From Euprymna scolopes (lineage: Eukaryota): DNA of 64,000 bases. Shown one piece after another: positions 1 through 55,905 of this stretch (within the stretch, counting starts at the first letter, position 1; each line of letters starts with the position of its first letter). Under the pieces are notes generated by a model, which made no database searches, had not been told where the DNA came from, and saw nothing but the letters and a program-made list of their open reading frames with translations. The stretch lies in assembly GCA_053919585.1 (NCBI GenBank), contig CM132803.1; one strand, given 5' to 3'. A program made the translations under genes and the position numbers.

Positions 1-1145
1 TCATCAGCTGTCAAGATAAAGGATCTCCTCCACTGCAAAGTAAGAGTAAGTTCTCCATCAAAGTCACCGATGTGAATGATGTAAGGCCACAGTTCTCTAT
101 GGAGACATTTAAGTTCTTGATTGAAGAGAATGAGAAGTCGAGATTTTCTGTTGGCTTCATCAATGCAACAGACCCAGACCTGGGAGTTGGAGGGAAACTC
201 ACCTATTCTCTGCTCACAAATAACAAACAGTTTTTACCTTTCAAAATCAAAGATGATGGCATGATTTCAGCTATTATGTCACTGGATCATGAGTTTCAAA
301 ACATTTACAAGTTTCAAGTATTTGTGAAAGATAATGGAATCCCATCTCTCAATAATACAGTCAACGTCATTGTTGAAGTGACTGATAAAAATGATAATGC
401 TCCGTATTTTACATTTCCCAGTGTCAATCCTTATAACATGGATGTTGTATATTACCGGCATCATTCAAAGAACATCACTTGTGTAAAGGCAGCTGATGGA
501 GATAGTCAAGAGAATGCATTTCTAAAATATGAAATAATCAGAGGCAATGACAAGCAGATGTTCACCATCAACCAGTACACTGGTTTGTTAACTTTCAATC
601 GGGCACTTGCGCAACAAGACGCTGGTTCCTATGAGCTAGTGTTTGTTGTCAAGGATAGTGGTAGTCCAGTTCTATCAGCAACAACTAGTATGTTTTTCAC
701 TGTGACTGTAAGCAACAAGACATCAGAAATGCTAAGTGCCGTTCATACAATCACTGAAGATAAAGTTGATCTTACATCAGTCATTATTATTACAGTTGTA
801 GCAGTGACAGTAGCAGTCATCATTACTGCTTCAATCTCGGTATGTATCATTCGCTGTAATGATCAGAGAAATGTCACATATGCCCATGCAATGGCACCAG
901 CTAATGTGGGTGTTGTTGGTCCAAGTGGCAGATATATGAGTGATCAGAGACATTTGATGTGTCCTTCAAAGCAAGGAATATCTTGGCCAACTGCTGTCAA
1001 TATAAATAAAAGTCAAGCAGATAAAATAAGAAATGCACATATAAACCAAACCAGCAGAGAATCTCATCCTGCAGAAAAGCTTCCCAGTCAGCAACAAAGA
1101 TCAGCTTCTCTTCCGCAGACACATTTGATTTCTGATTCACATCAG
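1..1145 (+). CDS. Protocadherin P1, 3' part of large exon (end of EC4, EC5, EC6, TM, juxtamembrane tail); 5' truncated by window
   Basis: Cadherin motifs DVNDVRPQF, ATDPD, LDHE, DKNDNAPYF; TM VIIITVVAVTVAVIITASISVCII; phase-0 donor CAG|GTTTG at 1145/1146. Confidence 0.93.
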
Positions 1146-2652: not shown

Positions 2653-2924
2653 GATTATATGCTTCCCAGTACTGCAATTCTCCATCAAAACGAAGAGGGC
2701 AACGATCACAAGAAACAGAGATGAGGCCATTGGGACAGACTGTCAACTACCCAAGTGATACAACCATTGTGGCCAGGGGATTCTACACACCAAGCCTTTC
2801 ACAAAACAATGATAACAAAGACTCTGTGGCAGAAGATAGTAATTCTTCTGATATAAGTCAGCAATCAGTTGGAAATATTTATAGAAATCCAAGACCCTTA
2901 CCACCTGTACCACATCAAAGCTAG
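2653..2924 (+). CDS. P1 terminal cytoplasmic exon 4 (..LYASQYCNSPSK...RNPRPLPPVPHQS*)
   Basis: tcAG acceptor in phase 1, in frame with exon 3; near-identical to exon 4 of the other genes. Confidence 0.88.
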
Positions 2925-10010: not shown

Positions 10011-10114
10011 GTAAATTTTAAAATAAAAATGAGGAGATAAAATATAAGTTTTCAATACTTTAATGAAAGCTAAAAATTCAAATTTACTTAAATTTATTTA
10101 TTTTTTTATTTCAG

Positions 10115-13100: not shown

Positions 13101-13253
13101 ATTATGGCCAGGGGATTCTATACACCAAATATTTCACAAAACAATAACAACAAAGAGTCTGTGACAGAAGATAATAACGTTTGTTATACAAGTCTCTTGT
13201 CAACAGGAAATATTTATAGAAATCCAAGACCTTTACCCCCAGTACCTCACTAA
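10115..13253 (+). pseudogene. Protocadherin pseudogene psiB: deleted large exon 10115-11107, exon-3 remnant ~12346-12478, exon 4 ~12991-13253
   Basis: Acceptor and leader nearly identical to P2, first ATG changed to ACG, frameshift in EC1, EC2, EC4 and EC5 deleted, donor CAG|GTTTG at 11107; exon-3 remnant has a stop; exon 4 still open. Confidence 0.88.
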
Positions 13254-16331: not shown

Positions 16332-18818
16332 ATGATAAAATTGAATTCATCAGATTCTTTCCAGAAGCAATCATACATAAAAATGATAGTATTAACATTT
16401 ATTTTGATATTTCTACACATTTGTCATGGTGTGGATTTATCATTTAAAGTTGAAGAAGGCAAAAGTCCTGGCACTTACCTCGGAGACATTGCTGCCGATT
16501 CTAATGTGATGGATGATGTGGCCATACAAGATCAAAATCTCATTGCATTCAGTCTTATGGAACAGGATGGAACAAGCAGCTCTCCATTATTCCGAATTTC
16601 TAAAAATACAGGAAAACTTTATACAGCACAAACATTGGATGCAGAATCATTGTGTACTTCCAACAAAGAATGTTTTGTGATGGTTGATGTTGCTGTACAA
16701 AAATCAAAAAGAATCATGAAGATTTTAGAAATTAAAGTAATAATTCAGGATGTAAATGACCATCAGCCTGAATTTCCTGATAAACAAGTAAACATTGAAT
16801 ATTCAGAGGATGTAGTTCCAGGAACAAAGGTATCAATTCCAAACGCCATTGATAAAGACGTAAGTCAGAAGAATTCTCTTATTACATATTCTTTAAAAAA
16901 ACTGAAGGAAGAACCATTTCAATTGTCAATATCTAAAAAGGTTGATGGAACATCAGACCTTAGTATAACATTAGAAAAAAGACTTGACCGAGAAGTTAAA
17001 GGTTCTTTTATGATTCGAATAATTGCAAAAGATGGAGGATCTCCTCCAAAAGAAAGTATTCTCTTGGTACATATTACTGTAACTGATGTCAATGATAATC
17101 CTCCTGTTTTTTCTCAAAGCGTCTACAATGTAACAATAAAAAACAAACCAAGTGAAACTTCTTCTATTGCGACTTTATCTGCCACAGATTTAGATTCTGG
17201 TAAAAATGGAAGAGTCACTTATCATTTCAGTACAAAAACATCTGATGTTGCTAAAAGTCATTTTAAATTAAATCAACAAACTGGACAAATTTTCTTAGAA
17301 AAGAAATTTACTTTGAGTAATGTATTAACACATAATTTGTATGTTGAAGCTAAAGATGGGGGCATACCACCATTAAATTCACTTGCAATGGTTTTGGTTA
17401 ATGTAATCAATCAACAAAACAATCCACCAACAATTCATCTAAAATTCCTGTCAGCATCAGGAAAAGATTCAACATCAGTTTCTGAAGACATTGAGGTGGG
17501 AAGTTCCATTGCATATGTAAAAGTGACTGATCATGATGTTGGACAAAATGGAGAAGTGAGTTGCAATCTGCATTATGATAAATTTAAACTACAAAGTCTC
17601 GACACTAAGAAATACCAAGTAATTGTGAAAAAAGCATTGGATAGAGAAAGAGAGGCAAAGCATGAAATTATCATCAGCTGTCAAGATAAAGGATCTCCTC
17701 CACTGCAAAGTAAGAGTAAGTTCTCCATCAAAGTCACCGATGTGAATGATGTAAGGCCACAGTTCTCTATGGAGACATTTAAGTTCTTGATTGAAGAGAA
17801 TGAGAAGTCGAGATTTTCTGTTGGCTTCATCAATGCAACAGACCCAGACCTGGGAGTTGGAGGGAAACTCACCTATTCTCTGCTCACAAATAACAAACAG
17901 TTTTTACCTTTCAAAATCAAAGATGATGGCATGATTTCAGCCATTATGTCACTGGATCATGAGTTTCAAAACATTTACAAGTTTCAAGTATTTGTGAAAG
18001 ATAATGGAATCCCATCTCTCAATAATACAGTCAACGTCATTGTTGAAGTGACTGATAAAAATGATAATGCTCCGTATTTTACATTTCCCAGTGTCAATCC
18101 TTATAACATGGATGTTGTATATTACCGGCATCATTCAAAGAACATCACTTGTGTAAAGGCAGCTGATGGAGATAGTCAAGAGAATGCATTTCTAAAATAT
18201 GAAATAATCAGAGGCAATGACAAGCAGATGTTCACCATCAACCAGTACACTGGTTTGTTAACTTTCAATCGGGTGCTTGCGCAACAAGATGCTGGTTCCT
18301 ATGAGCTAGTGTTTGTTGTCAAGGATAGTGGTAGTCCAGTTCTATCAGCAACAACTAGTATGTTTTTCACTGTGACTGTAAGCAACAAGACATCAGAAAT
18401 GCTAAGTGCCGTTCATACAATCACTGAAGATAAAGTTGATCTTACATCAGTCATTATTATTACGGTTGTAGCAGTGACCGTAGCAGTCATCATTACTGCT
18501 TCAATCTCGGTATGTATCATTCGCTGTAATGATCAGAGAAATGTCACATATGCCCATGCAATGGCACCAACCAATGTGGGTGTTGTTGGTCCAAGTGGCA
18601 GATATATGAGTGATCAGAGACATTTGATGTGTCCTTCAAAGCAGGGAATATCTTGGCCAACTGCTGTCAATGTAAACCAAAGTCAAACTGATAAAATAAG
18701 AAATGCACACATAAACCAAACCAGCAGAGAAGCCAATCCTCTAGAAAAGCTTCCCAGTCAACAACAAAGATCAGCCTCTTTACCACAAACTCAAACCAGG
18801 ATACATAACGAACAACAG
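16332..18818 (+). CDS. Protocadherin P2 large exon (signal peptide, EC1-EC6, TM); start may be ATG 16383
   Basis: Acceptor ttcAG at 16329; 6 cadherin repeats, EC1 Cys-X5-Cys; donor CAG|GTATTT at 18818. Confidence 0.95.
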
Positions 18819-19843
18819 GTATTTACAAACTAATTTTTATGTTATTTTTTAAATCTTTTTAGTGGTGCACTTTGTATATTTTTATTTATTACACATAATA
18901 TTAACTTCAAAGAATTCAATATTCCTTTTTATGTTTTTTACTATATACTTTTCAAATGCTGAAAATGATTACTAATTTTATTCAACTTTTTACAACCTGC
19001 TTTTTAACATTAGTCTACCTTCACTCTAAAATTGCACTGCATTAGCAACTATATTGTATTCTATATATTGTAATAATATGTGGTATATATGTTTATAGAT
19101 TTACACAAATTAATTCAAATTATAAATTCATCAAAACATATTTTTCATAGCCAATATAGTGATCTTTTAAAGAATAAAAACACCAACAATTATTAATAAA
19201 ATTTTATTTTATTGTCAGACATTTTTATAATTAGTTAAAAAGAAAAATTGAATAAAGAAATTTAAACAAAAGGCACAACAATTTTATATTATGATATTGT
19301 TAATTTTCAATTTATTGTGTTGTTCAGAAAGTTGATTGATTGTAGCAGTTGGGTCTTTAAACTATACATATAACTGTTATAATTTTGGTATGACTGATAT
19401 ATTGTCATAACTTGCAATGCAGTTACCTTTGGTAGATACATCTTTTATTTTGTCAAACATATTGCCAAATGTGGACAACCAAAAACTGCAGTTTTTTTTA
19501 AAAATCACAAATGAAGTTTAAAATTAAATAAAGTAACTGACAAATTTATCAGACTATACTAAGATATGATTAATATAAAGAAAAGGGGTTAAAGGGTATT
19601 ATATATTTGTTTTATTCACTTCATATTAGGCCGAATTTAAAAAAAAAAAAGTCTATATATGAAAATATGAATCATCTGCCTGGATCATATGTTAAATATA
19701 TTATTCAGCATGTAACAGACAGATGAGAAGTTTTGTTTTATTGTTAAATATTTGTTGCTTCTACGTTTCTGTGCAAATGATGGCCTGTTTACATAAATAT
19801 GTAAGAGATAATTTCTACAATATATAAATAGGAATGTATAGAT

Positions 19844-20570
19844 GTATTACAATAGAAAAATTCAAGCATGAAAAGTAATACGGTTAAGCTTAAACATGAA
19901 AAAGTAAAAGAATAGTTGTTAAAACTGGAAAAGAAAAGGACAAGATATTCTAGTAAAACACATAATAAATTTATAACTTAAAATATTGCAGCATTAAGAA
20001 TTGATTATATAATGTTGAATTAAATTTTTTTTTCATGTTTAAGCTTAACCATATTACATTTCATGTTTTTTCCAGGCTTCCAGTAAATTCACTTGTTCTT
20101 TGTTTAATTTCAGTCTTATTTTTTGTACTCATAAACATAACATACACATATGTAATAACAATGTACGGCACTCGTCTGCTTTCAATAAAATTCCCCCCAA
20201 TTATCTCCTTTTCATTCTTTCATTCTCTCTGTTTCACTTGTTGCTTTTCTTTTTGCGAGAGCAGTGAATTGGTAGCAACACTAATCGCTGAAGCGGCGTG
20301 GTTACTAAGAAAACCAGTCATACAAAACGGTGCTCACCTCCATACGTTTTTTTAAGATTTTGAACACCAGTAAATTCATCATAACTTTTGTTTTACTGAA
20401 CGAAAATTAAATTTTTTTTCATAATATAGATGAAAAAGTGATTTATAAACTTTAATAATTGTTTGAAATTTGGTCAAAAAATGAGTGAGTGGTGAAGCTT
20501 TAAAGCAGTTCTAAATGACTAAAACTGCCACTTAACCATATATTCAAACATTACCATGTTTGAATGATGA
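19844..20570 (+). mobile_element. Non-autonomous interspersed element with internal inverted repeat and terminal hairpin (copy 1)
   Basis: Reverse-complement match to 39370-40154 over several hundred bp; hairpin ATTCAAACA-N6-TGTTTGAAT at the end. Confidence 0.75.
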
Positions 20571-24652: not shown

Positions 24653-24918
24653 ATGTTTACACTTCCCAATACTGCAATTCTCCATCAAAACATAGAGGAC
24701 AGTCATCACAAGAAACAGAGATGAGACCATTGGGACAGACTGTCAACTATCCAAGTGATACAACTATTGTAGCCAGGGGATTCTATACACCAAGTCTTTC
24801 ACAAAACAATGACAACAAAGACTCTGTGGCAGAGGATAGTAATTCTTCTGATACAAGTCTGCCATCAACAGGAAATATTTATAGAAACCCAAGACCCTTA
24901 CCACCAGTTCCTCATTAA
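24653..24918 (+). CDS. P2 terminal exon 4
   Basis: tacAG acceptor in phase 1; VYTSQYCNSPSK...RNPRPLPPVPH*. Confidence 0.9.
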
Positions 24919-25359
24919 ATTTATATTTTTTCTACCTAAAATCAGCATAAATTTAATATAGTTGGATATTCAATATTTATTAGATGAAATATGACTCTAA
25001 ATACAATACATACTAAAAGGAACAAAATTATATGATTAAAAATATAGATTGTTGAATTTTAACGTAAGTTTACAAATTATATATATACTTAGCAGTCATC
25101 AGTAAGGAAAAATATAGTTTGGAAATGTTATAGTGAAACAAAGAATAATAAGAACATAAACAATTTATGACATATTAAGAAATTTCTAAAATAATTTCAC
25201 TCCTATTTACAGTTTTAAAACAAGTTAATATTATATTTAATATAGTGCTACAAATAAATATTCATACATACATTAGAGAGACATTGATGTTAAAGCAATG
25301 AAAGCCATTGTCCTGATTGTGTGTGTGTGTGAGAGAGAGAGAGAGAAGTAGAATCAGGA

Positions 25360-26607: not shown

Positions 26608-29079
26608 ATGATGACACAGGAATTCCTATTGATAATCAAAAGTATGTTGCTACAAATGTGTCTCTTAATTTATTGTGTAGACTTTTCTTACTGTGTTGAC
26701 CTGACTTTCAAAGTAGAAGAAGGTAAAAGTCCTGGCACTTACCTTGGAGACATTGCTGCCGATTCTAATGTGATGGATGATGTGGCCATACAAGATCAAA
26801 ATCTCATTGCATTCAGTCTTATGGAACAGGATGGAACAAGCAGTTCTCCATTATTCCGGATTTCTAAAAATACAGGAAAACTCTATACAGCACAAACATT
26901 GGATGCTGAATCTCTGTGTACTTATGGAAAAGAATGTTTCTTAATGGTTGATGTTGCGGTTCAAAAATCTAAAAGAATTATGAAGATTTTAGAAATCAAA
27001 GTAATAATTGAAGATGTAAATGATCATCAACCAGAATTTCCGGATAAACAAGTTAATATTGAGTTTGATGAAGATGATGGCAAAGGAGTGAAACGTATGA
27101 TCTCAAATGCAATAGATAAAGATATTGGACGCATTAATTCTCAGATTACATACGAGTTAAAAAAATATAAAAATGAACCATTTGATTTATCAGTCTCTAA
27201 AAATGTGGACGGAACAGCTGATCTTTACATTATTCTGAAAGAAAGATTAGATAGAGAAGTGAAAGAAAGCTACATGGTAAAAGTTATTGCTAAAGATGGC
27301 GGATCTCCTTCTAAACAAAGTATTTTAGATGTTCACATTTCAGTTACAGATATGAATGATAATCCTCCTGTCTTTTCACAAAATCTTTATAATGTCACAA
27401 TCAAAAATGAACCAAGTGAAACTTCTTCAATTGCAACTTTATCTGCCACAGATTTAGATTCTGGTAAAAATGGAAGAGTCACTTATCATTTCAGTACAAA
27501 AACATCGGATGTTGCTAAAAGTCATTTTAAATTAAATCAACAAACTGGACAGATTTTCTTAGAAAAGAAATTTACATTGAATAATATATTAATACATAAT
27601 TTGTATGTTGAAGCACAAGATCAAGGAAATCCTCCATTAACAGCAAAGTCAATGGTATTAGTCAATGTGAACAACCAACAGAATAACCCTCCAATGATTC
27701 ATCTCAAGTTCCTGTCAGCATCTGGAAAAGATTCAACATCAGTTTCTGAAAACATTGAGGTGGGAAGTTCTATTGCATATGTAAAAGTGACTGATCATGA
27801 TGTTGGACAAAATGGAGAAGTGAGTTGCAATCTGCATTATGATAAATTTAAACTACAAAGTCTCGACACTAAGAAATACCAAGTAATTGTGAAAAAAGCA
27901 TTGGATAGAGAAAGAGAGGCAAAGCATGAAATTATCATCAGCTGTCAAGATAAAGGATCTCCTCCACTGCAAAGTAAGAGTAAGTTCTCCATCAAAGTCA
28001 CCGATGTGAATGATGTAAGGCCACAGTTCTCTATGGAGACATTTAAGTTCTTGATTGAAGAGAATGAGAAGTCGAGATTTTCTGTTGGCTTCATCAATGC
28101 AACAGACCCAGACCTGGGAGTTGGAGGGAAACTCACCTATTCTCTGCTCACAAATAACAAACAGTTTTTACCTTTCAAAATCAAAGATGATGGCATGATT
28201 TCAGCCATTATGTCACTGGATCATGAGTTTCAAAACATTTACAAGTTTCAAGTATTTGTGAAAGATAATGGAATCCCATCTCTCAATAATACAGTCAACG
28301 TCATTGTTGAAGTGACTGATAAAAATGATAATGCTCCGTATTTTACATTTCCCAGTGTCAATCCTTATAACATGGATGTTGTATATTACCAGCATCATTC
28401 AAAGAACATCACTTGTGTAAAGGCAGCTGATGGAGATAGTCAAGAGAATGCATTTCTAAAATATGAAATAATCAGAGGCAATGACAAGCAGATGTTCACC
28501 ATCAACCAGTACACTGGTTTGTTAACTTTCAATCGGGTGCTTGCGCAACAAGATGCTGGTTCCTATGAGCTAGTATTTGTTGTCAAGGATAGTGGTAGCC
28601 CAGTTCTATCAGCAACAACTAGTATGTTTTTCACTGTCACTGTAAGCAACAAGACATCAGAAATGCTAAGTGCCGTTCATACAATCACTGAAGATAAAGT
28701 TGATCTTACATCAGTCATTATTATTACAGTTGTAGCAGTGACCGTAGCAGTCATCATTACTGCTTCAATCTCGGTATGTATCATTCGCTGTAATGATCAG
28801 AGAAATGTCACATATGCCCATGCAATGGCACCAGCCAATGTGGGTGTTGTTGGTCCAAGTGGCAGATATATGAGTGATCAGAGACATTTGATGTGTCCTT
28901 CAAAGCAGGGAATATCTTGGCCAACTGCTGTCAATGTAAACAAAAGCCAAGCAGATAAAATAAGAAGTGCACATATTAACCAAACCAACAGAGAATCTAA
29001 TCCTCTTGAAAAGCTTCCCAGTCAGCAACAAAGATCAGCTTCCTTACCTCATACTGAAACAAATTACAATGAACAACAG
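26608..29079 (+). CDS. Protocadherin P3 large exon
   Basis: Acceptor at 26593; 6 EC plus TM; donor CAG|GTAAGT at 29079. Confidence 0.95.
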
Positions 29080-32950: not shown

Positions 32951-33216
32951 ATGTATACTCATCACAGTACTGCAACTCTCCATCAAAACAAAGAGGGTTG
33001 CGAGTACAAGAGACAGAGATGAGACCATTGGGACAGACTGTCAACTACCCAAGTGATACAACCATTGTGGCCAGAGGATTCTACACACCAAGCCTTTCAC
33101 AAAACAATGACAATAAAGACTCTGTGACAGAAGACAGTAACTCTTCTGATACAAGTCTCCCGTCAACAGGAAATATTTATAGAAATCCAAGACCTTTACC
33201 CCCTGTACCCCAATAA
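32951..33216 (+). CDS. P3 terminal exon 4
   Basis: ttcAG acceptor in phase 1; VYSSQYCN...RNPRPLPPVPQ*. Confidence 0.9.
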
Positions 33217-35875: not shown

Positions 35876-38329
35876 ATGTTTATCACAGAGATGTCATTAT
35901 CCATTTATGTATTATTCCTTATTCTGGCCATATCTAAAGGTGCAGATCTGACATTTAAAGTAGAAGAAGGCAAAAGTCCTGGCACTTACCTTGGAGACAT
36001 TGCTGCCGATTCTAATGTGATGGATGATGTGGCCATACAAGATCAAAATCTCATTGCATTCAGTCTTATGGAACAGGATGGAACAAGCAGCTCTCCATTA
36101 TTCCGGATTTCTAAAAATACAGGAAAACTTTATACAGCACAAACATTGGATGCCGAGTCACTATGTACTTCCAACAAAGAATGTTTTGTGATGGTTGATG
36201 TTGCTGTACAGAAATCTAAAAGAATAATGAAGATATTAGAAGTAAAAGTTAATGTACAAGATGTGAATGATCATCAACCAGAATTTCCTGACAAACAAGT
36301 TAACATTGAATTTTCTGAAAGGGATGCAAAAGGGACAAAATTATCGATTCCAAACGCCATTGATAAAGATGTAAGTCAGAAGAATTCCCTTATTACATAT
36401 TCTTTAAAAAAACTGAAGGAAGAACCATTTCAATTGTCAATATCTAAAAAGGTTGATGGAACATCAGACCTTAGTATAACATTAGAAAAAAGACTTGACC
36501 GAGAAGTGAAAGATTCTTTTATGATTCGAATAATTGCAAAAGATGGAGGATCTCCTCCAAAAGAAAGTATTCTCTTGGTACATATTACTGTTACTGATGT
36601 CAATGATAATCCTCCTGTTTTTTCTCAAAGCGTCTACAATGTAACAATAAAAAACAAACCAAGTGAAACTTCTTCTATTGCAACTTTATCTGCCACAGAT
36701 TTAGATTCTGGTAAAAATGGAAGAGTCACTTATCATTTCAGTACAAAAACGTCTGATGTTGCTAAAAGTCATTTTAAATTAAATCAACAAACTGGACAGA
36801 TTTTCTTAGAAAAGAAATTTACACTAAGTAATGTATTAACACATAATTTGTATGTTGAAGCTAAAGATGGAGGAATCCCACCATTAAATTCACTTGCAAT
36901 GGTTTTGGTTAATGTAATTAATCAACAAAATAACCCACCAACAATTCATCTAAAATTCCTGTCAGCATCCGGAAAAGATTCAACATCAGTTTCTGAAAAC
37001 ATTGAGGTGGGAAGTTCCATTGCATATGTAAAAGTGACTGATCATGATGTTGGACAAAATGGAGAAGTGAGTTGCAATCTGCATTATGATAAATTTAAAC
37101 TACAAAGTCTCGACACTAAGAAATACCAAGTAATTGTGAAAAAAGCATTGGATAGAGAAAGAGAGGCAAAGCATGAAATTATCATCAGCTGTCAAGATAA
37201 AGGATCTCCTCCACTGCAAAGTAAGAGTAAGTTCTCCATCAAAGTCACCGATGTGAATGATGTAAGGCCACAGTTCTCTATGGAGACATTTAAGTTCTTG
37301 ATTGAAGAGAATGAGAAGTCGAGATTTTCTGTTGGCTTCATCAATGCAACAGACCCAGACTTGGGAGTTGGAGGGAAACTCACCTATTCTCTGCTCACAA
37401 ATAACAAACAGTTTTTACCTTTCAAAATCAAAGATGATGGCATGATTTCAGCCATTATGTCACTAGATCATGAGTTTCAAAACATTTACAAGTTTCAAGT
37501 ATTTGTGAAAGATAATGGAATCCCATCTCTCAATAATACAGTCAACGTCATTGTTGAAGTGACTGATAAAAATGATAATGCTCCGTATTTTACATTTCCC
37601 AGTGTCAATCCTTATAACATGGATGTTGTATATTACCGGCATCATTCAAAGAACATCACTTGTGTAAAGGCAGCTGATGGAGATAGTCAAGAGAATGCAT
37701 TTCTAAAATATGAAATAATCAGAGGCAATGACAAGCAGATGTTCGCCATCAACCAGTACACTGGTTTGTTAACTTTCAATCGGGTGCTTGCGCAACAAGA
37801 TGCTGGTTCCTATGAGCTAGTGTTTGTTGTCAAGGATAGTGGTAGTCCAGTTCTATCAGCAACAACTAGTATGTTTTTCACTGTGACTGTAAGCAACAAG
37901 ACGTCAGAAATGCTAAGTGCCGTTCATACAATCACTGAAGATAAAGTTGATCTTACATCAGTCATTATTATTACGGTTGTAGCAGTGACCGTAGCTGTTA
38001 TCATTACTGCTTCAATCTCGGTATGTATCATTCGCTGTAATGACCAGAGAAATGTCACATATGCTCATGCAATGGCACCAGCCAATGTGGGTGTTGTTGG
38101 TCCAAGTGGCAGATATATGAGTGATCAAAGACATTTGATGTGTCCTTCAAAGCAGGGAATATCTTGGCCAACTGCTGTCAATGTAAACCAAAATCAATCA
38201 GATAAAGTAAGAAATGCACACATAAACCAAACTAACAGAGAATCTCATCCTACAGAAAAGCTTCCCAGTCAACAACAGAGATCAACCTCCCTTCCTCATA
38301 ACCAGACTTCAGCAAGTATTGAATCACGG
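35876..38329 (+). CDS. Protocadherin P4 large exon
   Basis: Acceptor at 35830; 6 EC plus TM; donor CGG|GTAAGT at 38329. Confidence 0.95.
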
Positions 38330-38984: not shown

Positions 38985-39369
38985 GTATTTAACACAATAT
39001 TCTCTTTATTTTTTGCTTGTTCACAAATTCATATTAATTTTTATAAAGAAAAAAGAATAAATAATTTTCTTTTTACTTTTCTAAAAAGATTCTCAATTTA
39101 TCATTAACTGAACACATAATTATCAGCCAAGATCAAGAGTTTTATTTCTAGAAAATGTGAATTAGTAAACAAAAAAGAGAAATATTTTTATCATTTTTCT
39201 AAGCAATTTTTCTGCATAAAATAAAGTAAGAGGGAATACTTTTATTAAATATTCTTTCTTTGAATAAGATATTTCATACATTATGGAATGTATTTATGTC
39301 CCTAAATAAGTAAACTGTTGGATTTATTTTATTTATTTAAATACAGAATGATTGCTTTTTAGAAAACTA

Positions 39370-40154
39370 ATCATTCAAACACAGTAGTGTTTGAATATAT
39401 GGTTAAGTGGCAGTTTTAGTCATTTAGAACTGCTTTAAAGCTTCACCACTCACTCATTTATTTTACCAAATTTCAAACAATTATTACAGCTTATAGATCA
39501 CTTTCTCAGCTATATTATGAAAAAAACAAAATTTTTTCGTTCAGTAAAACAAAAGTTATGATGAATTTTCTGGTATTCAAAATCGTAAAAATATGTAAGG
39601 AGGTGAGCGACGCTTTTTATGACTGGTTTCCACAGCAACTATGTTGCTTTAGAGACTACTATTGCTACAAATTCACTGCTGTCACAGAAAGAGAAGCAAC
39701 AAGTGAAACAGAGAATGAAAGCATGAAAGGGAGATAATTGGGGGGATTTTATTGAAAGCAGACAAGTGCCATACATTGTTATTACATATGTGTTTATGGG
39801 GGCAAGAAAAATAAGATTGAAATTAAACAAAGAACAAGTGAATTTATTGGAAGCCTGGAAAAATCATGGATTACAATAGAAAAATGCGAGCATGAAAAGT
39901 AATATGGTTAAGCTTAAACATGGAAAAGTAAAGGACTAGTTGTTAAAACTGGAAAAGCAAAGGACAAGATATTCTGGTAAAAAATATAATAAATTCATGA
40001 CTTAAAATATTGCACTATTAAGAATTTTTAAAAAAATTCGATTTATAACATTATATAATTAATTCTGAATGCTGCAATATTTTAAGTTATAAATTTATCA
40101 TATTTTTTACTAGAATATATTGTTTTTTCATGCTCGAATTTTCTATTGTAATAC
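39370..40154 (-). mobile_element. Copy 2 of the palindrome-containing element (inverted relative to 19844-20570)
   Basis: Reverse-complement similarity; internal inverted arms 39870-40027 and 40060-40154. Confidence 0.75.
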
Positions 40155-40325
40155 AATATTCTTAAATAAAAAAAAATTATAAATTAGTTATCTTTTCTGC
40201 TACACAAATTCTCAAAATATGTCCAGTTTCATATTATTTTTTTCCCCGATTCTTTTATTAAAATACTATCCTTACATAAAAGGGTGTTCACTATTTTATT
40301 ACTGTGGTTATTAAGAAAAAAATTG

Positions 40326-40913
40326 GGCTGACATACATGAGTGAGGCCCCCATAGCGAAATACGCATCAGCTCCGATGTTGTACGTAGCTCGTTAGTTTT
40401 AGGTAATTATTATCAGGAAAATTGGTGCAAGTCCAGATTAGCACTTGTTAGATATATTTTTGGGCAATATCTGTTTTTATTAAATTGTTAGGTGAAAGTA
40501 CAGAATAGGTATAAAACACTTCCCATCCCCATGTTAAGAATGGCTTTCTAAATAATAACACTATAATTTCAGTACGGATCAATAAGTGTATGAGTACCTT
40601 TTATTTTCTTGAATTAAAAAAAACAAAACTACTCGACAAGAACATGACTGTTTTTGTTTTAATAATTATTTTTATTCAAAAATGAAAAATAAAAATAACT
40701 ATAATCTCCAGCCCCCCCCCCCCCGAAAAAAACCTAAGAACAAAATAATCTGAAAAGCGCAAAGTTCAAGCCAAAATAAAAAAAAACAATGCCACATATG
40801 CCAAAATTCTTTCCTTTCTTTTCAGATTAATGATCACTCCCTGAAACGTGCTGCATACAACATCAGAGCCGATGCGTATTTCGCTATGGGGTCCTCACTT
40901 GTGTACGTCAGCC
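40326..40913. mobile_element. MITE with ~70-bp TIRs and 8-bp target-site duplication
   Basis: TIR GGCTGACATACATGAGTGAGGCCCCATAGCGAAATACGCATC... mirrored at 40845-40913; AAAAATTG on both flanks. Confidence 0.88.
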
Positions 40914-41308
40914 AAAAATTGTAATGAAAATACTGCATTCATTATTAAGATAATATGGAAAGCAAAACTTATTTTAAAACTGTTTTAGAAGATAGAATTT
41001 TCCATTACGTAAAAAGCATTTTCTTTGGAAGAATTCATATAGGAGTTCTCCAGACTAAACTGTGAGAGAATAAATTAGAAAATAAAATAGAGATCAATAA
41101 AAAAATATAATATTGAAATAATTCAAGTTACTGAAAAAACTTGCTAAAATTAAGTTTTTTTTTTATTGACATTGAAATATGGCTAAAGTCCTATTTCATT
41201 TTCTCTCATATTTTGAGTAATAAGAATAGTTTATGAATTTATGATTATATTTAACATAAGATATAATACATTAGAATTAGTTGTTTACTTTTCATTTATA
41301 TATTTCAG

Positions 41309-41574
41309 AACTTTACACTTCCCAGTACTGCAATTCTCCATCAAAACGAAGAGGACAATCATCACAAGAGACAGAGATGAGACCATTGGGACAGACTGTC
41401 AACTACCCAAGTGATACAACCATTGTGGCTAGAGGATTCTACACACCAAGTTTTACACAAAACAATGACAACAAAGAGTCTGTGACAGAGGATAGTAACT
41501 CTTCTGACACAAGTCTCCCATCAACAGGAAATATTTATAGAAATCCAAGACCCTTACCACCAGTACCGCAGTAA
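41309..41574 (+). CDS. P4 terminal exon 4
   Basis: ttcAG acceptor in phase 1; LYTSQYCN...RNPRPLPPVPQ*. Confidence 0.9.
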
Positions 41575-41610
41575 AGTTTTAAATGTCTGATATGTATTAA
41601 TACTAACTTG

Positions 41611-41742
41611 NNNNNNNNNNNNNNNNNNNNNNNNNNNNNNNNNNNNNNNNNNNNNNNNNNNNNNNNNNNNNNNNNNNNNNNNNNNNNNNNNNNNNNNNNN
41701 NNNNNNNNNNNNNNNNNNNNNNNNNNNNNNNNNNNNNNNNNN
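41611..41742. other. Assembly gap (N run)
   Basis: N characters. Confidence 1.
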
Positions 41743-44217: not shown

Positions 44218-46653
44218 ATGATACACATAGGAATTCTATTCTCTATTTTGCATATTGTATTTACTGCGGATCTGACAGTGAAAGTTGAAGAAGGGAAAAG
44301 TCCTGGCACTTACCTTGGAGACATTGCTGCCGATTCTAATGTGATGGATGATGTGGCCATACAAGATCAAAATCTCATTGCATTCAGTCTTATGGAACAG
44401 GATGGAACAAGCAGCTCTCCATTATTCCGGATTTCTAAAAATACAGGAAAACTTTATACAGCACAAACATTGGATGCAGAGTCATTGTGCACATTCTACA
44501 AAGAATGTTTTCTAATGGTTGATGTTGCTGTTCAAAAATCTAAAAGGATTATGAAAATACTTGAAGTAAAAGTAATAATACAAGACATTAATGATCATCA
44601 ACCAGAATTTCCTGATAAACAAGTGAACATAAAATTTTCTGAGGGAGATATCACAGGAACAAAAATATCAATTCCTAATGCTGTTGACAAAGATATTGGA
44701 ATTATCAATTCTCAGATTACTTATGAACTAAAGAAATATAAAGATGAACCATTTGATTTGTCCGTTTCCAAAAATATTGATCAAACTGCTGATCTCTATA
44801 TTATTCTGAAAGAAAGATTGGACAGAGAAGTGAAAGAAAGCTACATGGTAAAAGTCATTGCTAAAGATGGTGGATCTCCTTCTAAACAAAGTATTTTAGA
44901 TGTTCACATTTCAGTTGCAGATGTGAATGATAATCCTCCTGTTTTCTCACAAAATCTTTATAATGTCACAATCAAAAATGAACCAAGTGAAACTTCTTCT
45001 ATTGCAACTTTATCTGCCACAGATTTAGATTCTGGAAAAAATGGAAGAGTCACTTATCATTTCAGTACAAAAACATCTGATGTTGCGAAAAGTCATTTTA
45101 AATTAAATCAACAAACTGGACAGATTTTCTTAGAAAAGAAATTTACATTGAGTAACATGCTGACTTATAACTTATTTGTGGAGGCTACTGATGGTGGCAA
45201 TCCTCCCTTAACAGCTAAATCAATGATCATTGTAAATGTTGTTAATAATCAAAATAATCCACCAACAATTCACTTAAAATTTTTGGCAGCATCTGGAAAA
45301 GATTCAACATCTGTTTCTGAAAATATTGAGGTGGGAAGTTCCATTGCATATGTAAAAGTGACTGATCATGATGTTGGACAAAATGGAGAAGTGAGTTGCA
45401 ATCTGCATTATGATAAATTTAAACTACAAAGTCTCGACACTAAAAAATACCAAGTAATTGTGAAAAAAGCATTGGATAGAGAAAGAGAGGCAAAGCATGA
45501 AATTATCATCAGCTGTCAAGATAAAGGATCTCCTCCACTGCAAAGTAAGAGTAAGTTCTCCATCAAAGTCACCGATGTGAATGATGTAAGGCCACAGTTC
45601 TCTATGGAGACATTTAAGTTCTTGATTGAAGAGAATGAGAAGTCGAGATTTTCTGTTGGCTTCATCAATGCAACAGACCCAGACCTGGGAGTTGGAGGGA
45701 AACTCACCTATTCTCTGCTCACAAATAACAAACAGTTTTTACCTTTCAAAATCAAAGATGATGGCATGATTTCAGCTATTATGTCACTGGATCATGAGTT
45801 TCAAAACATTTACAAGTTTCAAGTATTTGTGAAAGATAATGGAATCCCATCTCTCAATAATACAGTCAACGTCATTGTTGAAGTGACTGATAAAAATGAT
45901 AATGCTCCGTATTTTACATTTCCCAGTGTCAATCCTTATAACATGGATGTTGTATATTACCGGCATCATTCAAAGAACATCACTTGTGTAAAGGCAGCTG
46001 ATGGAGATAGTCAAGAGAATGCATTTCTAAAATATGAAATAATCAGAGGCAATGACAAGCAGATGTTCACCATCAACCAGTACACTGGTTTGTTAACTTT
46101 CAATCGGGCACTTGCGCAACAAGACGCTGGTTCCTATGAGCTAGTGTTTGTTGTCAAGGATAGTGGTAGTCCAGTTCTATCAGCAACAACTAGTATGTTT
46201 TTCACTGTGACTGTAAGCAACAAGACATCAGAAATGCTAAGTGCCGTTCATACAATCACTGAAGATAAAGTTGATCTTACATCAGTTATTATTATTACGG
46301 TTGTAGCAGTGACTGTAGCAGTCATCATTACTGCTTCAATCTCGGTGTGTATCATTCGCTGTAATGATCAGAGAAATGTCACATATGCCCATGCAATGGC
46401 ACCAGCTAATGTAGGTGTTGTTGGTCCAAGTGGCAGATATATGAGTGATCAGAGACATTTGATGTGTCCTTCAAAGCAGGGAATATCTTGGCCAACTGCT
46501 GTCAATGTAAACAAAGGCCAAACAGACAAAACAAGAAATGCACACATAAACCAAACCAGCAGAGAATCCCATCCTCTAGAAAAGCTTCCCAGTCAGCAAC
46601 AGAGATCAGCTTCTTTACCTCAGAATCAAACACAGCTTCAAGATTCTCACCAG
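44218..46653 (+). CDS. Protocadherin P5 large exon
   Basis: Acceptor at 44185; 6 EC plus TM; donor CAG|GTAGTA at 46653. Confidence 0.95.
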
Positions 46654-47976: not shown

Positions 47977-49144
47977 GTAAGTAATAAAATGATGCTTTTC
48001 TCTCTGTTTTTTAATTGATTTTTATTTTTCCTGTTTCATAAACTTTCAGCATTTAATTTTTTGATTTTATTATTAATTGAATTAAGAAATGCAATAGTGT
48101 AAACTGAAACACACCTTTTAAAAATCTTATTTGAAATAATAATTTAATTTCCAAAAAACGTTTGCTTCTCATCTATATATCGATATTTTTTCATACCTGA
48201 TATTTAAAAAAAAAACATTTTGATTTTTGTTTTGACAGTTCACACTATACAAATTAGAACTTTCTTGAAATTTTACAAGACTTTATTTTCACACCACATT
48301 AATAAAACATATGTACCATCCGTATAATTTTTTTTTTTTTTTAAATTAAATGAAGGCGGAGAAGATTCTTGTCAACCAATTTGTAAATTTTCTTTTCTCT
48401 TTTTAGACATATCATAAAATGATTTTACAATGTTCAGGGCTGAACTATGAATATGTTTTTAAACTTTTACATTCACATTAATCTGGTACTATTAAATCCC
48501 ATTTGATGAAGAAGCTGGTATTTTTAAATGTTAGTCTTTGTGTTCAAGAAAACATTCTTGAAATAAGGACATGTTTCTATATGGGAATGTTATTAAGTTC
48601 TGAGCAAAGTATTGCATAATGAATGAAGTATTTTTGAAAAATAAAAAGATTTTAAATGATTACAGTTTGAATACTTAGAAAATTGTTTAAAAATAAAATA
48701 TATTACGGTGTGATATATCGGATGATATTAAAAATATTACTCAAATTTGATCATGGTCTATGAATATTTTGTTCACAAAAATCAGTTTTTAATGAAATAT
48801 CCTGAAAAATCAATACTTACTTGTGAAAATAAAGATACACATCACTAAATTTGTACAAATTATTTATATTCCTTAAGTACTTCATAAGTTCCAACATGGG
48901 AACATTGGTAGTTTTTTAAATGTGAAATCTTTTTATTTGTCACTCTTTAAATTTAAACATAATTTCTTTTAAAAGTTAATACATGGTAGCATAATTCAGA
49001 TATAAAAAGATTAATTCATAGGATTTTTAATTTGTTATATCAATTTTTGCAATAAAAAAGTTTTAATACGTATATTTAACTTCTAAAATAATTTTTATTT
49101 TATAATTTGTGATGATATTACTGTTGATTGCATCTATTTTTCAG

Positions 49145-49410
49145 AAGTTTATACTTCCCAGTATTGTAATTCTCCATCAAAAGAAAGAAGGTTGCCAGCA
49201 CAAGACACAGAGATGAGGCCATTGGGACAGACTGTCAACTATCCAAGTGATACAACCATTGTGGCCAGGGGATTTTATACACCAACTCTTTCACAAAACA
49301 ATGACATTAAAGATTCTGTGACAGAGGACAGTAATTCTTCTGATATAAGTCAGCAGTCAGTGGGAAATCTTTATAGAAACCCAAGACCTTTACCCCCAGT
49401 ACCACAGTAA
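49145..49410 (+). CDS. P5 terminal exon 4
   Basis: ttcAG acceptor in phase 1; VYTSQYCN...LYRNPRPLPPVPQ*. Confidence 0.9.
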
Positions 49411-49909
49411 TTGCTGCAGTTTATACATTATACTTCAATAATTATTTAATTCTTTTAAAGTGTTATTTAACATGAAGAAAAATTAATTTATTTGCAATTT
49501 TTTTTTCAAATATTAAAAATATACTTTTCTCAAAAATTAAATCAAAAGAATAGGATTAAATAAAATATCATTTTTAGAAAAAAATGTCATATTTTATACA
49601 TCAAATGATTATCTTAAATACAACAACTTACATTTTTTTCATAAAACGATTTTCGTTTCTTAAAAACAAAGAATAGTTATAAAAGTGACAGGCATTTAAA
49701 ATGAATAGCTGCATTAATCTTATGGTATTGACAAAAATTCCCAAAACAGACCCAAGTATGATTTTTCTGTCAGCTGAAGATGTATTTTGTATACTGTTGA
49801 TAATTGCACAGACTATTTTATACTTACATTAATTACAGATGAAGATGCTTTTATGCTATAGAGAGCCACCATGTTTTAGAGAAGGAGAAAGAAGAAAGCA
49901 GGCAGCAAG

Positions 49910-50282
49910 GAACAAAGGATTGAATTGACACAATGCATTTTGGGAATTAAAAATGAATTTCATTTATTTTTAAAATTTATAATTAAATACACATTTATTT
50001 CCAAATATTTATGCATTTAGGAGAATTTTATGAAAAAAAAAAAGAATAATTAAAATTAATTATGTTGGCTTTGTTTTCTTTATGATGAATAGTAGTTGTC
50101 GTTTATAGTAGCAGCCATTGTACATACATCACATTCACTAGGATTCCTACTTACTGTCTCAACTAAACATAAAGGATGGATCCCTGACTGAATGATTTTC
50201 TTTTAAACAATTGCTGCATAAGATATAGTAACAGCATCAATTCCATTGTATTTTAATTAGACAATCATTCTTTGCTACAAAG
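49910..50282 (+). promoter_or_regulatory. P6 promoter module and non-coding exon 1
   Basis: GAACAAAGG 49910, GCATTTTGGGA 49935, GTAGCAGCCATT 50108-50119, donor AAG|GTAAGT 50282/50283. Confidence 0.8.
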
Positions 50283-50504
50283 GTAAGTACATTTAATCAT
50301 TCTGTTTTTTGTTTGGATGTCAACGACATATAGGAAAATGCATTCTAGTCTATACTTCCCAGTACTGTAATTTTCCATCTTGCTAAACATTTGATATAAG
50401 AAAATTTTGATTTAAAGAGTGTGAATTTATAAATTTATAAACTGCATATTTTAATATTATTTTCTTTATACTTCTAAATATTTGTAGACAGTTTGTTATT
50501 AATA

Positions 50505-51096: not shown

Positions 51097-53535
51097 ATGT
51101 TGATTCAAATATGGATTCTGCTCTCATTCCTACACATTTGTAATAGTGTAGATTTGACATTCAAAGTTGAAGAAGGTAAAAGTCCTGGCACTTACCTTGG
51201 AGACATTGCTGCCGATTCTAATGTGATGGATGATGTGGCCATACAAGATCAAAATCTCATTTCATTCAGTCTTATGGAACAAGATGGAACAAGCAGCTCT
51301 CCATTATTCCGGATTTCTAAAAATACAGGAAAACTTTATACAGCACAAACATTGGATGCTGAATCTCTGTGTACTTATGGAAAAGAATGTTTCTTAATGG
51401 TTGATGTTGCAGTTCAGAAATCTAAAAGGATTATGAAAATTTTAGAAATCAAAATAATAATTGAGGATGTAAATGATCATCAACCAGAATTTCCTGATAA
51501 ACAAGTGACCGTTCTGTTTGAAGAAAATTATAAAAAAGGAACACAAGTTTTAATTCCAAATGCTATTGACAAAGATATTGGAGATATCAATTCACAAATA
51601 ACTTATGATCTTAAAAAATATAAAGATGAACCATTCGGGTTATCTGTTTCAAAAAATGTTGATGGCACATCAGACTTATATATGATACAAAAGGAGAGCT
51701 TAGACAGAGAAGTGAAAGAAAGCTACATGGTAAAAGTCATTGCTAAAGATGGTGGATCTCCTTCTAAACAAAGTATTTTAGATGTTCACATTTCAGTTGC
51801 AGATGTGAATGATAATCCTCCTGTCTTCTCACAAAATCTTTATAATGTCACAATCAAAAATGAACCAAGTGAAACTTCTTCTATTGCAACTTTATCTGCC
51901 ACAGATTTAGATTCTGGTAAAAATGGAAGAGTCACTTATCATTTCAGTACAAAAACATCTGATGTTGCTAAAAGTCATTTTAAATTAAATCAACAAACTG
52001 GACAGATTTTCTTAGAAAAGAAATTTACATTGAGTAACATGCTGACTTATAACTTATTTGTGGAGGCTACTGATGGTGGCAATCCTCCCTTAACAGCTAA
52101 ATCAATGATCATTGTAAATGTTGTTAATAATCAAAATAATCCACCAACAATTCATCTAAAATTTTTGGCAGCATCTGGAAAAGATTCAACATCTGTTTCT
52201 GAAAACATTGAGGTGGGAAGTTCCATTGCATATGTAAAAGTGACTGATCATGATGTTGGACAAAATGGAGAAGTGAGTTGCAATCTGCATTATGATAAAT
52301 TTAAACTACAAAGTCTCGACACTAAGAAATACCAAGTAATTGTGAAAAAAGCATTGGATAGAGAAAGAGAGGCAAAGCATGAAATTATTATCAGCTGTCA
52401 AGATAAAGGATCTCCTCCACTGCAAAGTAAGAGTAAGTTCTCCATCAAAGTCACCGATGTGAATGATGTAAGGCCACAGTTCTCTATGGAGACATTTAAG
52501 TTCTTGATTGAAGAGAATGAGAAGTCAAGATTTTCTGTTGGCTTCATCAATGCAACAGACCCAGACCTGGGAGTTGGAGGGAAACTCACCTATTCTCTGC
52601 TCACAAATAACAAACAGTTTTTACCTTTCAAAATCAAAGATGATGGCATGATTTCAGCCATTATGTCACTGGATCATGAGTTTCAAAACATTTACAAGTT
52701 TCAAGTATTTGTGAAAGATAATGGAATCCCATCTCTCAATAATACAGTCAACGTCATTGTTGAAGTGACTGATAAAAATGATAATGCTCCGTATTTTACA
52801 TTTCCCAGTGTCAATCCTTATAACATGGATGTTGTATATTACCGGCATCATTCAAAGAACATCACTTGTGTAAAGGCAGCTGATGGAGATAGTCAAGAGA
52901 ATGCATTTCTAAAATATGAAATAATCAGAGGCAATGACAAGCAGATGTTCGCCATCAACCAGTACACTGGTTTGTTAACTTTCAATCGCGTGCTTGCGCA
53001 ACAAGATGCTGGTTCCTATGAGCTAGTGTTTGTTGTCAAGGATAGTGGTAGCCCAGTTCTATCAGCAACAACTAGTATGTTTTTCACTGTCACTGTAAGC
53101 AACAAGACATCAGAAATGCTAAGTGCCGTTCATACAATCACTGAAGATAAAGTTGATCTTACATCAGTCATTATTATTACGGTTGTAGCAGTGACTGTAG
53201 CAGTCATCATTACTGCTTCAATCTCGGTATGTATCATTCGCTGTAATGACCAGAGAAATGTCACATATGCTCATGCAATGGCACCAGCCAATGTGGGTGT
53301 TGTTGGTCCAAGTGGCAGATATATGAGTGATCAGAGACATTTGATGTGTCCTTCAAAGCAAGGAATATCTTGGCCAACTGCTGTCAATGTAAACCAAAGT
53401 CAAACAGATAAAATAAGAAATGCACATATCAACCAAACCAGCAGAGAATCCAATCCCACAGAAAAGCTTCCCAGTCAGCAACAAAGATCAGCTTCTCTGC
53501 CACAGGCTAAAACCCAATTACAAGCTGAATCTAAA
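51097..53535 (+). CDS. Protocadherin P6 large exon
   Basis: Acceptor at 51046; 6 EC plus TM; donor AAA|GTAAGT at 53535. Confidence 0.95.
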
Positions 53536-55639: not shown

Positions 55640-55905
55640 ATGATTATGCTTCCCAATACTACAATTCACCATCAAAAGAAAGGAGACCACCAGGACAAGA
55701 AACAGAGATGAGGCCATTGGGACAGACTGTCAACTATCCAAGTGATACAACCATTGTGGCCAGGGGATTCTATACACCAAGCCTTTCACAAAACAATGAT
55801 AACAAAGACTCTGTGGCAGAGGATAGTAATTCTTCTGATATAAGTCAGCAGTCAGTGGGAAATATTTATAGAAACCCAAGACCCTTACCACCAGTACCTC
55901 AATAA
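55640..55905 (+). CDS. P6 terminal exon 4
   Basis: tttAG acceptor in phase 1; DYASQYYNSPSK...RNPRPLPPVPQ*. Confidence 0.88.

What the first reader, a model, noticed from the sequence alone, without database searches (positions are those of the whole stretch)
36347..36960. Patchwork sharing of variable cassettes between different gene pairs
Seen: P2 and P4 share most of EC2 through EC3 (16836-17445 vs 36347-36960) but differ at the EC2 start. P5 and P6 share late EC2 through EC3 (~44821-45310 vs ~51703-52200). P3 and P6 share the EC1 loop region (TYGKECFLM). In EC6, P1 and P5 share NRAL, while P4, P6 and P7 share MFAIN. No single tree fits all of these. Inference: segmental conversion or unequal crossover, anchored in the constant bands, shuffles modules and generates new specificity combinations.
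Basis: partly seen in the sequence, partly recalled or inferred. Interest (0 to 1): 0.7.

Follow-up and report, generated by a model that had tools for sequence, protein, structure and literature searches.

The report
Gene-conversion mosaics in cephalopod protocadherins
Neighbouring nerve-cell adhesion (protocadherin) genes of a squid- or cuttlefish-like animal have copied pieces of their recognition domains into one another, so each gene is a real patchwork; fish and other vertebrates are known to do the same, so this is a clean, independent example and not a new mechanism.

Summary
The window holds seven same-strand protocadherin genes, each a 2.5-kb exon (six cadherin repeats, membrane span) plus its own small tail exon. 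In DNA, P4 matches P2 from 36347 onward (dS 0.07). The 136 bases before that point are saturated. P5 matches P6 from 44821/51703 (dS 0.05), and P3 matches P6 over the EC1 loop (dS 0.25). Run-length, PHI, triplet and AU tests all reject a single tree. Contigs from two other studies span the P4 junction, so it is not an assembly artefact.

Fifteen genes of a related species show what happened. The EC4-to-tail block groups by species, which is concerted evolution. The variable cassettes group across species, which is old orthology. By that orthology P2 and P5 are native in their variable stretches, P6 is native only in early EC2 and carries a P3-like EC1 loop, and P4 matches P2 from mid-EC2 on. 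The orthologous neighbour pair in the other species shares the same EC3 piece independently. The flanks are unrelated, so unequal crossover is not supported.

Best reading: germline interlocus gene conversion with partial tracts, as in vertebrate protocadherin clusters. Nothing points to somatic shuffling. Whether the patchwork creates new binding specificities is untested. The scan had already noted the constant block and the banding on this same window.

The parts
36347..36979 (+). P4 tract shared with P2 (P2 16836-17468): mid EC2 to the end of EC3. It is two layers of different age: columns 508-983 with dS 0.07 and columns 984-1140 with dS 0.30.
   Evidence: junction spanned by contigs of runs X2 and X3
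36211..36346 (+). P4 island of old divergence (EC1-EC2 linker and EC2 start; P2 counterpart 16700-16835). It has 38 differences in 136 bases and synonymous sites are saturated.
   Evidence: nearest relatives are species-B genes, not window genes
16836..17468 (+). P2 copy of the shared tract. It is native to the P2 lineage for EC2, because the positional orthologue B13 carries the same cassette.
44821..45323 (+). P5 tract shared with P6 (late EC2 through EC3), dS 0.047
51703..52205 (+). P6 tract shared with P5
51337..51508 (+). P6 tract shared with P3 (end of EC1, loop motif, linker), dS 0.245. P6's positional orthologue B09 is unlike it here.
26884..27055 (+). P3 copy of the tract shared with P6
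51509..51702 (+). P6 native EC2 start and middle; its nearest sequence is the orthologue B09 of the related species
36980..38179 (+). P4 copy of the homogenised EC4-EC6, membrane-span and juxtamembrane block (dS 0.05 among window genes). It carries short incompatible shared variants, including MFAIN at 37736-37753.
594..617 (+). P1 EC6 variant NRAL, shared with P5 (46099-46122). Three clustered derived bases (columns 1946, 1947, 1962).
35876..38329 (+). P4 large exon, from the start codon to the last base before the GT splice donor at 38330
41305..41576 (+). Small second exon of the P4 unit (cytoplasmic tail).

Best explanation
The patchwork is the footprint of repeated germline interlocus (non-crossover) gene conversion between members of a tandem protocadherin array.

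Conversion is frequent enough in three stretches to keep them almost identical in DNA: the first two-thirds of EC1, the start of EC3, and the 1.2 kb from EC4 to the juxtamembrane region. From these identical stretches, some conversion tracts run on into the old, divergent recognition segments (end of EC1, EC2, second half of EC3) and stop there at different points in different gene pairs.

The result is genes that share one segment with one paralogue and the next segment with another. Islands of ancient divergence are left between the tracts, above all at the start of EC2.

Shown here: the mosaic itself, its statistical significance, its age relative to a sister species, concerted evolution of the constant block, the absence of flank homology, and the presence of the P4 junction in other samples.

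Inferred: initiation in the constant bands, selection protecting the islands, and any effect on binding specificity.
For: 1. Synonymous divergence is about 0.05 in EC4-to-tail and about 0.1 in the two short constant bands, but 1.0-1.3 in the variable bands. dN/dS is about 0.1 everywhere.
2. Shared tracts have dS of 0.07 (P2-P4), 0.05 (P5-P6) and 0.25 (P3-P6). They directly abut stretches where dS is saturated.
3. Homology between units ends at the exon edges. The signal peptide, the intron and the intergenic DNA are unrelated.
4. With 15 genes of a related species, the constant block forms two species clades (within-window 0.5%, within-B 2-3%, between 8%). The variable segments interleave: P2+P4+B13 at 99-100, P6+B09 at 93, P5+B08 at 96.
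5. Noncoding flanks give positional orthology for P5~B08, P6~B09 and P2~B13. The nearest-neighbour scan then shows which stretch of each gene is native and which is overwritten.
6. Formal tests reject one tree: run-length permutation, PHI, AU, Fisher and triplet tests.
7. Within the constant block, 56 of 120 pairs of informative sites fail the four-gamete test at only 0.5% divergence.
8. B08 and B09 are identical in the same EC3 segment (dS 0) but have dS 1.15 upstream. The process therefore recurs in the sister lineage.
9. Contigs of runs X2 (36192-36675, 1 difference) and X3 (36181-36418, 0 differences) bridge the P4 junction.
Against: - Donor and recipient are polarised only indirectly, through one outgroup species. 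For the EC3 tract of P5/P6 they cannot be polarised at all.
- The array extends beyond the window. Depth in run X1 suggests some tens of copies of the constant block, so true donors may lie outside.
- P2+P4 as sisters is not rejected topologically in the EC1-loop segment (AU p 0.17). For that pair the evidence is a jump in divergence, not a conflict of trees.
- The signal for GC-biased conversion is mixed. GC3 is 0.34 and 0.28 in two constant bands but 0.12 in the third.
- Only the P4 junction was checked against independent data.
Confidence: 0.85

Rival explanations
1. Unequal crossover between misaligned paralogues created chimeric genes. For example, P6 would be a fusion of a P3-like 5' part and a P5-like 3' part, with copy-number change.
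For: The genes are tandem, in the same orientation, and share 1.2-kb identical blocks that could mediate misalignment. In the related species B03-B05 are true tandem duplicates whose flanks are alike, so duplication by crossover does occur in this family.
Against: A crossover as young as the shared tracts (dS 0.05-0.07) would leave the downstream intron and intergenic DNA equally similar. Between P5 and P6, and between P2 and P4, nothing outside the exon aligns except the 83-92% second exon and repeats. P6 has three changes of partner inside 900 bases. P5/P6 keep positional orthology with B08/B09.
Confidence: 0.06
2. The sharing partners are recent whole-gene duplicates, and the divergent islands arose afterwards by very fast adaptive change.
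For: P2 and P4 are nearly identical over most of the exon and differ in one 136-base island at a likely recognition surface.
Against: In the islands synonymous sites are saturated (20 of 26 for P2-P4; dS 1.4 for P5-P6), which selection on protein cannot produce. The P2 and P5 islands have orthologues in the other species. The flanks of the partners are unrelated.
Confidence: 0.03
3. The chimeras are assembly artefacts caused by the near-identical blocks.
For: Seven copies of a 1.2-kb block at 99.5% identity are a classic trap for assemblers. Depth in the constant bands is 10-30 times that of the variable bands in short-read contigs.
Against: Contigs from two other studies cross the P4 junction and carry P4-specific bases on both sides. 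The breakpoints lie inside divergent sequence, not inside the long repeats. An independent assembly of another species shows the same kind of mosaic.
Confidence: 0.03
4. Programmed or somatic cassette shuffling diversifies the receptors in neurons.
For: None directly. Only the modular look of the pattern and the presence of decayed exon relics (7691-8307, 10016-11084) that could in principle act as donors.
Against: The same junction occurs in samples of different studies. The tracts carry accumulated substitutions (dS 0.05-0.3), so they are old and inherited. The relics are 75-95% identical and match no tract. The sister species shows fixed mosaics too.
Confidence: 0.01

Closest known systems
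Regionally restricted gene conversion in vertebrate clustered protocadherins (Noonan et al. 2004, Genome Res 14:354, cited from PMC4978886 and PMC6339937; the paper itself is not held in the library)
   Same: Tandem same-strand protocadherin units, each with six cadherin repeats in one large exon. Synonymous divergence is lowest in the membrane-proximal repeats and highest in EC2-EC3 (PMC4978886, Table 2 and discussion). Paralogues are homogenised within a lineage.
   Different: Here each unit has its own second exon instead of shared constant exons (PMC9068888 states this for cephalopods). The expansion is independent of the vertebrate one. Homogenisation also covers most of EC1, the start of EC3 and all of EC4. 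Partial tracts into EC2-EC3 can be dated and polarised against a sister species.
Cephalopod protocadherin arrays (Albertin et al. 2015; Albertin et al. 2022, PMC9068888; Styfhals et al. 2019, PMC6339937)
   Same: Multi-exon genes in head-to-tail sub-arrays of closely related members. [quoted passage not shown]
   Different: Those papers infer conversion from whole-gene trees only. In the passages I searched I found no segment-level analysis, tract mapping or test. That is what this window provides.
Mosaic alleles and paralogues made by interlocus conversion in other tandem recognition families (MHC class I/II, KIR, red/green opsins, plant NLR clusters). Named from general knowledge, not tested here.
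   Same: Short tracts move between paralogues, giving segment-wise conflicting trees, and diversity is retained at recognition surfaces.
   Different: Different protein family and function. Here the strongest effect is homogenisation of a large non-recognition block.

Membership tests
Region-restricted interlocus gene conversion in protocadherin arrays | Tandem, same-orientation paralogues encoding six cadherin repeats plus a membrane span in one large exon | tested here: met
   Seven ORFs of about 835 aa on the + strand. Pfam Cadherin in 5 stretches plus Cadherin_2. GT donor at each exon end.
Region-restricted interlocus gene conversion in protocadherin arrays | Synonymous divergence strongly depressed in some segments relative to others of the same genes | tested here: met
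   dS is 0.049 (EC4 to tail) and 0.10-0.13 (two short bands), against 1.0-1.3 in the variable bands.
Region-restricted interlocus gene conversion in protocadherin arrays | Concerted evolution: paralogues group by species in the homogenised segment and by orthology in the spared segments | tested here: met
   Segment F splits into two species clades. Segments B, C1, C2 and E interleave with support 93-100.
Region-restricted interlocus gene conversion in protocadherin arrays | Statistically significant tracts and conflicting segment trees | tested here: met
Vertebrate-type clustered protocadherin locus (alpha/beta/gamma) | Many variable first exons spliced to one shared set of constant exons | tested here: not met
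   Each unit is followed by its own tail exon of about 270 bp, 83-92% alike between units. This agrees with PMC9068888. Splicing itself was not seen in the reads shown.
Chimeric genes by unequal crossover (Lepore-type fusions) | Similarity of the fused part continues into the flanking non-coding DNA of the parent | tested here: not met
   No flank homology between P2/P4, P5/P6 or P3/P6 beyond the exon.
Programmed templated diversification (for example chicken immunoglobulin pseudogene conversion) | Somatic variation between cells or tissues, with silent donor cassettes | tested here: inconclusive
   The same P4 junction occurs in independent samples, and the tracts carry old substitutions. These argue against it, but no tissue-matched comparison was possible.
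Homophilic specificity code of protocadherins | Different cassette combinations give different binding specificity | not testable with these tools
   Only sequence is available. P2 and P4 differ at 13 ectodomain residues, P5 and P6 at 31, and other pairs at 37-65.

The most novel reading that the evidence does not exclude
Conversion in this array may be patterned and not haphazard. The same neighbouring gene pair (P5/P6 here, B08/B09 in the sister species) has independently been made identical over the same EC3 segment, while the start of EC2 stays old in every gene. That could mean that selection, or a conversion hotspot, maintains 'sister' receptors that share one interface half and differ in the other. 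This would be a germline-encoded combinatorial code built from about three cassette positions, comparable in logic to Dscam1 exon choice.
Probability: 0.12. Interest if true: 0.75.

Novelty: new member of a known kind. Interest (0 to 1): 0.45.

Why it matters
Vertebrates and cephalopods expanded protocadherins independently. This window shows, at base resolution and with a sister species as control, that the cephalopod array has reached the same evolutionary regime as fish and other vertebrate clusters. The membrane-near half is kept uniform by copying between genes. The recognition segments are spared, and occasional partial tracts make mosaic genes.

That turns a passing suggestion in the cephalopod genome papers into a tested statement. 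It also marks the start of EC2 and the second half of EC3 as the stretches most likely to carry specificity. Finally, it supplies natural near-isogenic pairs (P2/P4 with 13 residue differences, P5/P6 with 31) for binding tests.

Tried and rejected
- GC-biased conversion as extra support gave a mixed answer. GC3 is raised in two constant bands but lowest in the third, so I do not rely on it.
- The global run-length test did not single out P3-P6 (global p 0.30, pairwise 0.0016). Its significance rests on the AU, Fisher and triplet tests.
- I tried to find the positional orthologue of P4 from flanks. Only a weak 200-base match downstream of B03-B05 turned up, so it is unclear whether P4's island is its own remnant or an import.
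- The key vertebrate paper (Noonan et al. 2004b, PMC353213) is not held. I cite it only through papers that summarise it.
- The reads call showed no splice joint from the large exon to the small exon among the rows listed, and only a handful of RNA reads on P4. Expression and splicing of this gene are therefore not shown.
- A words search of earlier findings with four terms found nothing.
Exons were handled separately by reference.
- The N runs (41611-41742, 63476-63610, 63678-63925) were left untouched.

Full report
WHAT IS IN THE WINDOW

The window carries seven open reading frames of about 835 codons, all on the + strand and 7-15 kb apart:
- P1, cut by the window start, 1-1202
- P2 16332-18833
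- P3 26608-29115
- P4 35876-38395
- P5 44218-46722
- P6 51097-53586
- P7 59191-61707

Pfam finds five strong cadherin repeats plus the protocadherin-type N-terminal Cadherin_2 domain. Each frame runs into a GT splice donor about 15 codons after a conserved SLP motif.

A self-comparison shows that similarity between units is confined to the large exon, from just after the signal peptide to just before the donor. The one exception is an element of about 270 bp found once per intergenic space. That element is an open frame ending in a proline-rich motif and a stop, so it is a private second exon for each unit.

Decayed exon relics lie at 7691-8307, 9770-9917, 10016-10472 and 10587-11084.

The closest proteins in the public collection are 83-86% identical and all come from one unnamed ENA assembly. 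The best named hits are cuttlefish (Acanthosepion pharaonis) protocadherins at about 60%. The animal is therefore a decapodiform cephalopod. The architecture (full genes, no shared constant exons) is the one described for cephalopods in PMC9068888.

CHECK OF THE OBSERVATION

The six complete exons align without a single gap over 2350 columns. Column c corresponds to P4 coordinate 35839+c.

- P2 and P4 differ at 38 of 136 bases in columns 372-507 (P4 36211-36346). They differ at only 7 of 476 in columns 508-983, starting exactly at 36347, and at 10 of 148 in columns 984-1131.
- P5 and P6 differ at 82 of 343 bases in columns 315-657 and at 5 of about 500 from column 658 (44821/51703).
- P3 and P6 differ at 8 of 172 bases in columns 292-463, where other pairs differ at 25-40.
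This is immaterial.
- Domain labels are correct. The linkers lie at columns 421 (EC1/2), 757 (EC2/3), 1081 (EC3/4), 1411 (EC4/5) and 1726 (EC5/6), and the membrane span is at 2122. The NRAL and MFAIN variants therefore lie in EC6.

IS IT MORE THAN CHANCE, AND DOES NO SINGLE TREE FIT?

- A GENECONV-style permutation of the 373 polymorphic sites gives longest identical runs of 58 sites (P2-P4) and 61 sites (P5-P6), global p <= 0.0002. P3-P6 gives 20 sites, pairwise p 0.0016.
- The pairwise homoplasy index is 11.6 standard deviations below its permutation mean.
- Fisher tests across the breakpoints, restricted to polymorphic sites, give 1.7e-12 (P2-P4), 1.3e-19 (P5-P6) and 6e-6 / 4e-9 (P3-P6).
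- Treating P6 as the child of P3 and P5, it follows P3 in columns 315-483, neither in 484-657, and P5 in 660-1149. The maximum descent is 60 against at most 47 in 20,000 permutations.
- In maximum-likelihood trees that include 15 genes of the related species, P3+P6 has support 98-99 in the EC1-loop segment, and forcing P5+P6 there is rejected (AU p 0.0009).
- In the EC3 segment P5+P6 has support 100, and forcing P3+P6 is rejected (p 8e-5).
- In mid EC2, P3+P6 is rejected (p 0.013).
- For P2/P4 the conflict is one of age and not of topology. P2+P4 is not rejected in the EC1-loop segment (p 0.17).
- Inside the constant block, 16 informative sites among seven genes give 56 of 120 four-gamete failures at 0.5% divergence. 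They form small clusters of shared derived bases: P1+P5 at columns 1946, 1947 and 1962; P4+P7 at 2157 and 2160; P4+P6 at 2205 and 2226.

WHAT PRODUCED IT

Synonymous divergence is the key measurement.
- It is 0.049 from EC4 to the juxtamembrane region, and 0.10-0.13 in two short constant bands (first two-thirds of EC1, start of EC3).
- It is 1.0-1.3 in the variable bands. dN/dS is about 0.1 throughout.
- The shared tracts have dS 0.071 (P2-P4, columns 508-981), 0.30 (P2-P4, 985-1140), 0.047 (P5-P6) and 0.245 (P3-P6).
- The stretches next to them are saturated.
- Protein-level selection cannot make synonymous sites identical, and it cannot saturate them in an island. So the constant parts are recent copies and the islands are old.

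I fetched eight loci of the related assembly and extracted 15 complete exons, B01-B15.
- In the constant block, divergence is 0.5% within the window, 2-3% within B and 8% between them. The tree splits cleanly by species. This is concerted evolution.
- In the variable bands, within-species and between-species distances are equal (25-35%). Particular cassettes pair across species: P2+P4+B13 (99-100), P6+B09 (93), P5+B08 (96).
- Non-coding flanks independently give positional orthology of P5 with B08, P6 with B09 (adjacent genes in both species) and P2 with B13.

A nearest-neighbour scan then reads each gene.
- P5 is native (closest to B08) up to about column 606 and equals P6 from 652.
- P6 equals P3 at 292-426, is native (closest to B09) at 427-696, and equals P5 from 652.
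- P2 is native (closest to B13) through EC2.
- P4 has no close partner at 337-516 and equals P2 from 517.
- The likely directions are therefore P2 into P4 for EC2 and P3 into P6 for the EC1 loop. These are inferences from one outgroup.
- For the EC3 tract no direction can be given. B08 and B09 are themselves identical there (dS 0, against 1.15 upstream), and each species' pair is its own closest relative. Forcing P5+B08 or P6+B09 is rejected at p < 1e-40. The same neighbours have thus been converted over the same segment in both lineages.
- The related species shows significant tracts in 10 of 105 pairs.

RIVALS

- Unequal crossover predicts that the flank of a chimera is as similar to its parent as the shared tract. 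Nothing outside the exon aligns between the partners, apart from the 83-92% second exon and repeats. P6 changes partner three times within 900 bases.
- Recent duplication followed by rapid adaptive divergence is excluded by saturated synonymous sites in the islands and by their orthologues in species B.
- Assembly artefact. In contigs of public runs, the P4 junction at 36347 is bridged by a 484-base contig of run X2 (36192-36675, one difference) and a 238-base contig of run X3 (36181-36418, no difference). They come from studies other than that of the best DNA holder X1, and both carry the P4 states at 36370 and 36388. A contig of X1 with the P2 states at those places loses its fit upstream, as expected for P2. 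Depth in X1 is about 20 in the variable bands and 250-640 in the constant bands, as expected if some tens of genomic copies share the block. Only this junction could be checked, because one reads call was allowed.
- Somatic shuffling has no support. The junction is the same in different samples, and the tracts carry old substitutions.

HOW IT MOST LIKELY WORKS

Shown: the mosaic, its age structure, concerted evolution, and no crossover signature.

Inferred:
- Heteroduplex formation starts where paralogues are already identical, and extends into divergent sequence until mismatches stop it. This would explain why every tract has one end in a constant band and the other inside a variable band.
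- Tracts that overwrite the start of EC2 or the second half of EC3 are mostly removed by selection, because these stretches distinguish the receptors. Here all six genes are distinct only in the linker and EC2-start segments, while the EC1 loop and late EC3 each exist in four protein types.
- Whether mosaics make new specificities is open. P6 is a new combination, but P2 and P4 now differ at only 13 ectodomain residues.

COMPARISON WITH WHAT IS KNOWN

Region-restricted conversion with EC2-EC3 spared is established for vertebrate clustered protocadherins (Noonan et al. 2004b, as summarised in PMC4978886).

[quoted passage not shown] Searches found no segment-level study.

The finding is thus a new, well-resolved member of a known kind, reached convergently in an array of full genes. 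The scan had already noted the constant block and the banding on this very window.

Noticed in passing
window 7691-8307, 9770-9917, 10016-10472, 10587-11084, 13000-13249: Decayed relics of one or two further protocadherin units lie between P1 and P2. They are exon pieces at 75-95% identity, with an internal deletion, plus a diverged tail exon. The piece at 10016-10472 also matches about 110 bases upstream of the P2 start codon.
   Followed up: partly
window 2649-2914, 24662-24919, 32954-33212, 41305-41576, 49141-49406, 55645-55901: The private second exons are patchy too. Units 1, 5 and 6 share one variant of an eight-residue stretch near the end, and units 2, 3 and 4 share another. Unit 5 and the relic share a further variant near the start. 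This grouping differs from the groupings seen in the large exon.
   Followed up: partly
window 39232-40624 (also 19842-20568 against 39370-40026): Very high-copy repeats lie in the P4-P5 intergenic space. Summed contig depth is 10^4-10^5 in run X1 against about 20 for unique DNA, and many reads and contigs run on into unrelated sequence. These are presumably transposable elements.
   Followed up: no
window 36980-38179 (run X1): Depth of the constant block in short-read contigs is 12-30 times that of the variable bands. This suggests that the genome holds some tens of genes sharing this block at 97% or more, far more than the seven in the window.
   Followed up: no
L006 2775-19782 (B03, B04, B05): In the related species, three consecutive genes are near-identical over all segments and their downstream flanks are alike. 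This is a genuine recent tandem triplication, and it contrasts with the conversion mosaics.
   Followed up: partly
L001 7703-8932 and 19251-20477: The intergenic DNA after B08 and after B09 both match window 49112-50308 at about 70%. Part of the spacer is therefore duplicated within the related species.
   Followed up: no
L007 2979-3770: A reverse-transcriptase (RVT_1) reading frame lies between protocadherin genes of the related species.
   Followed up: no
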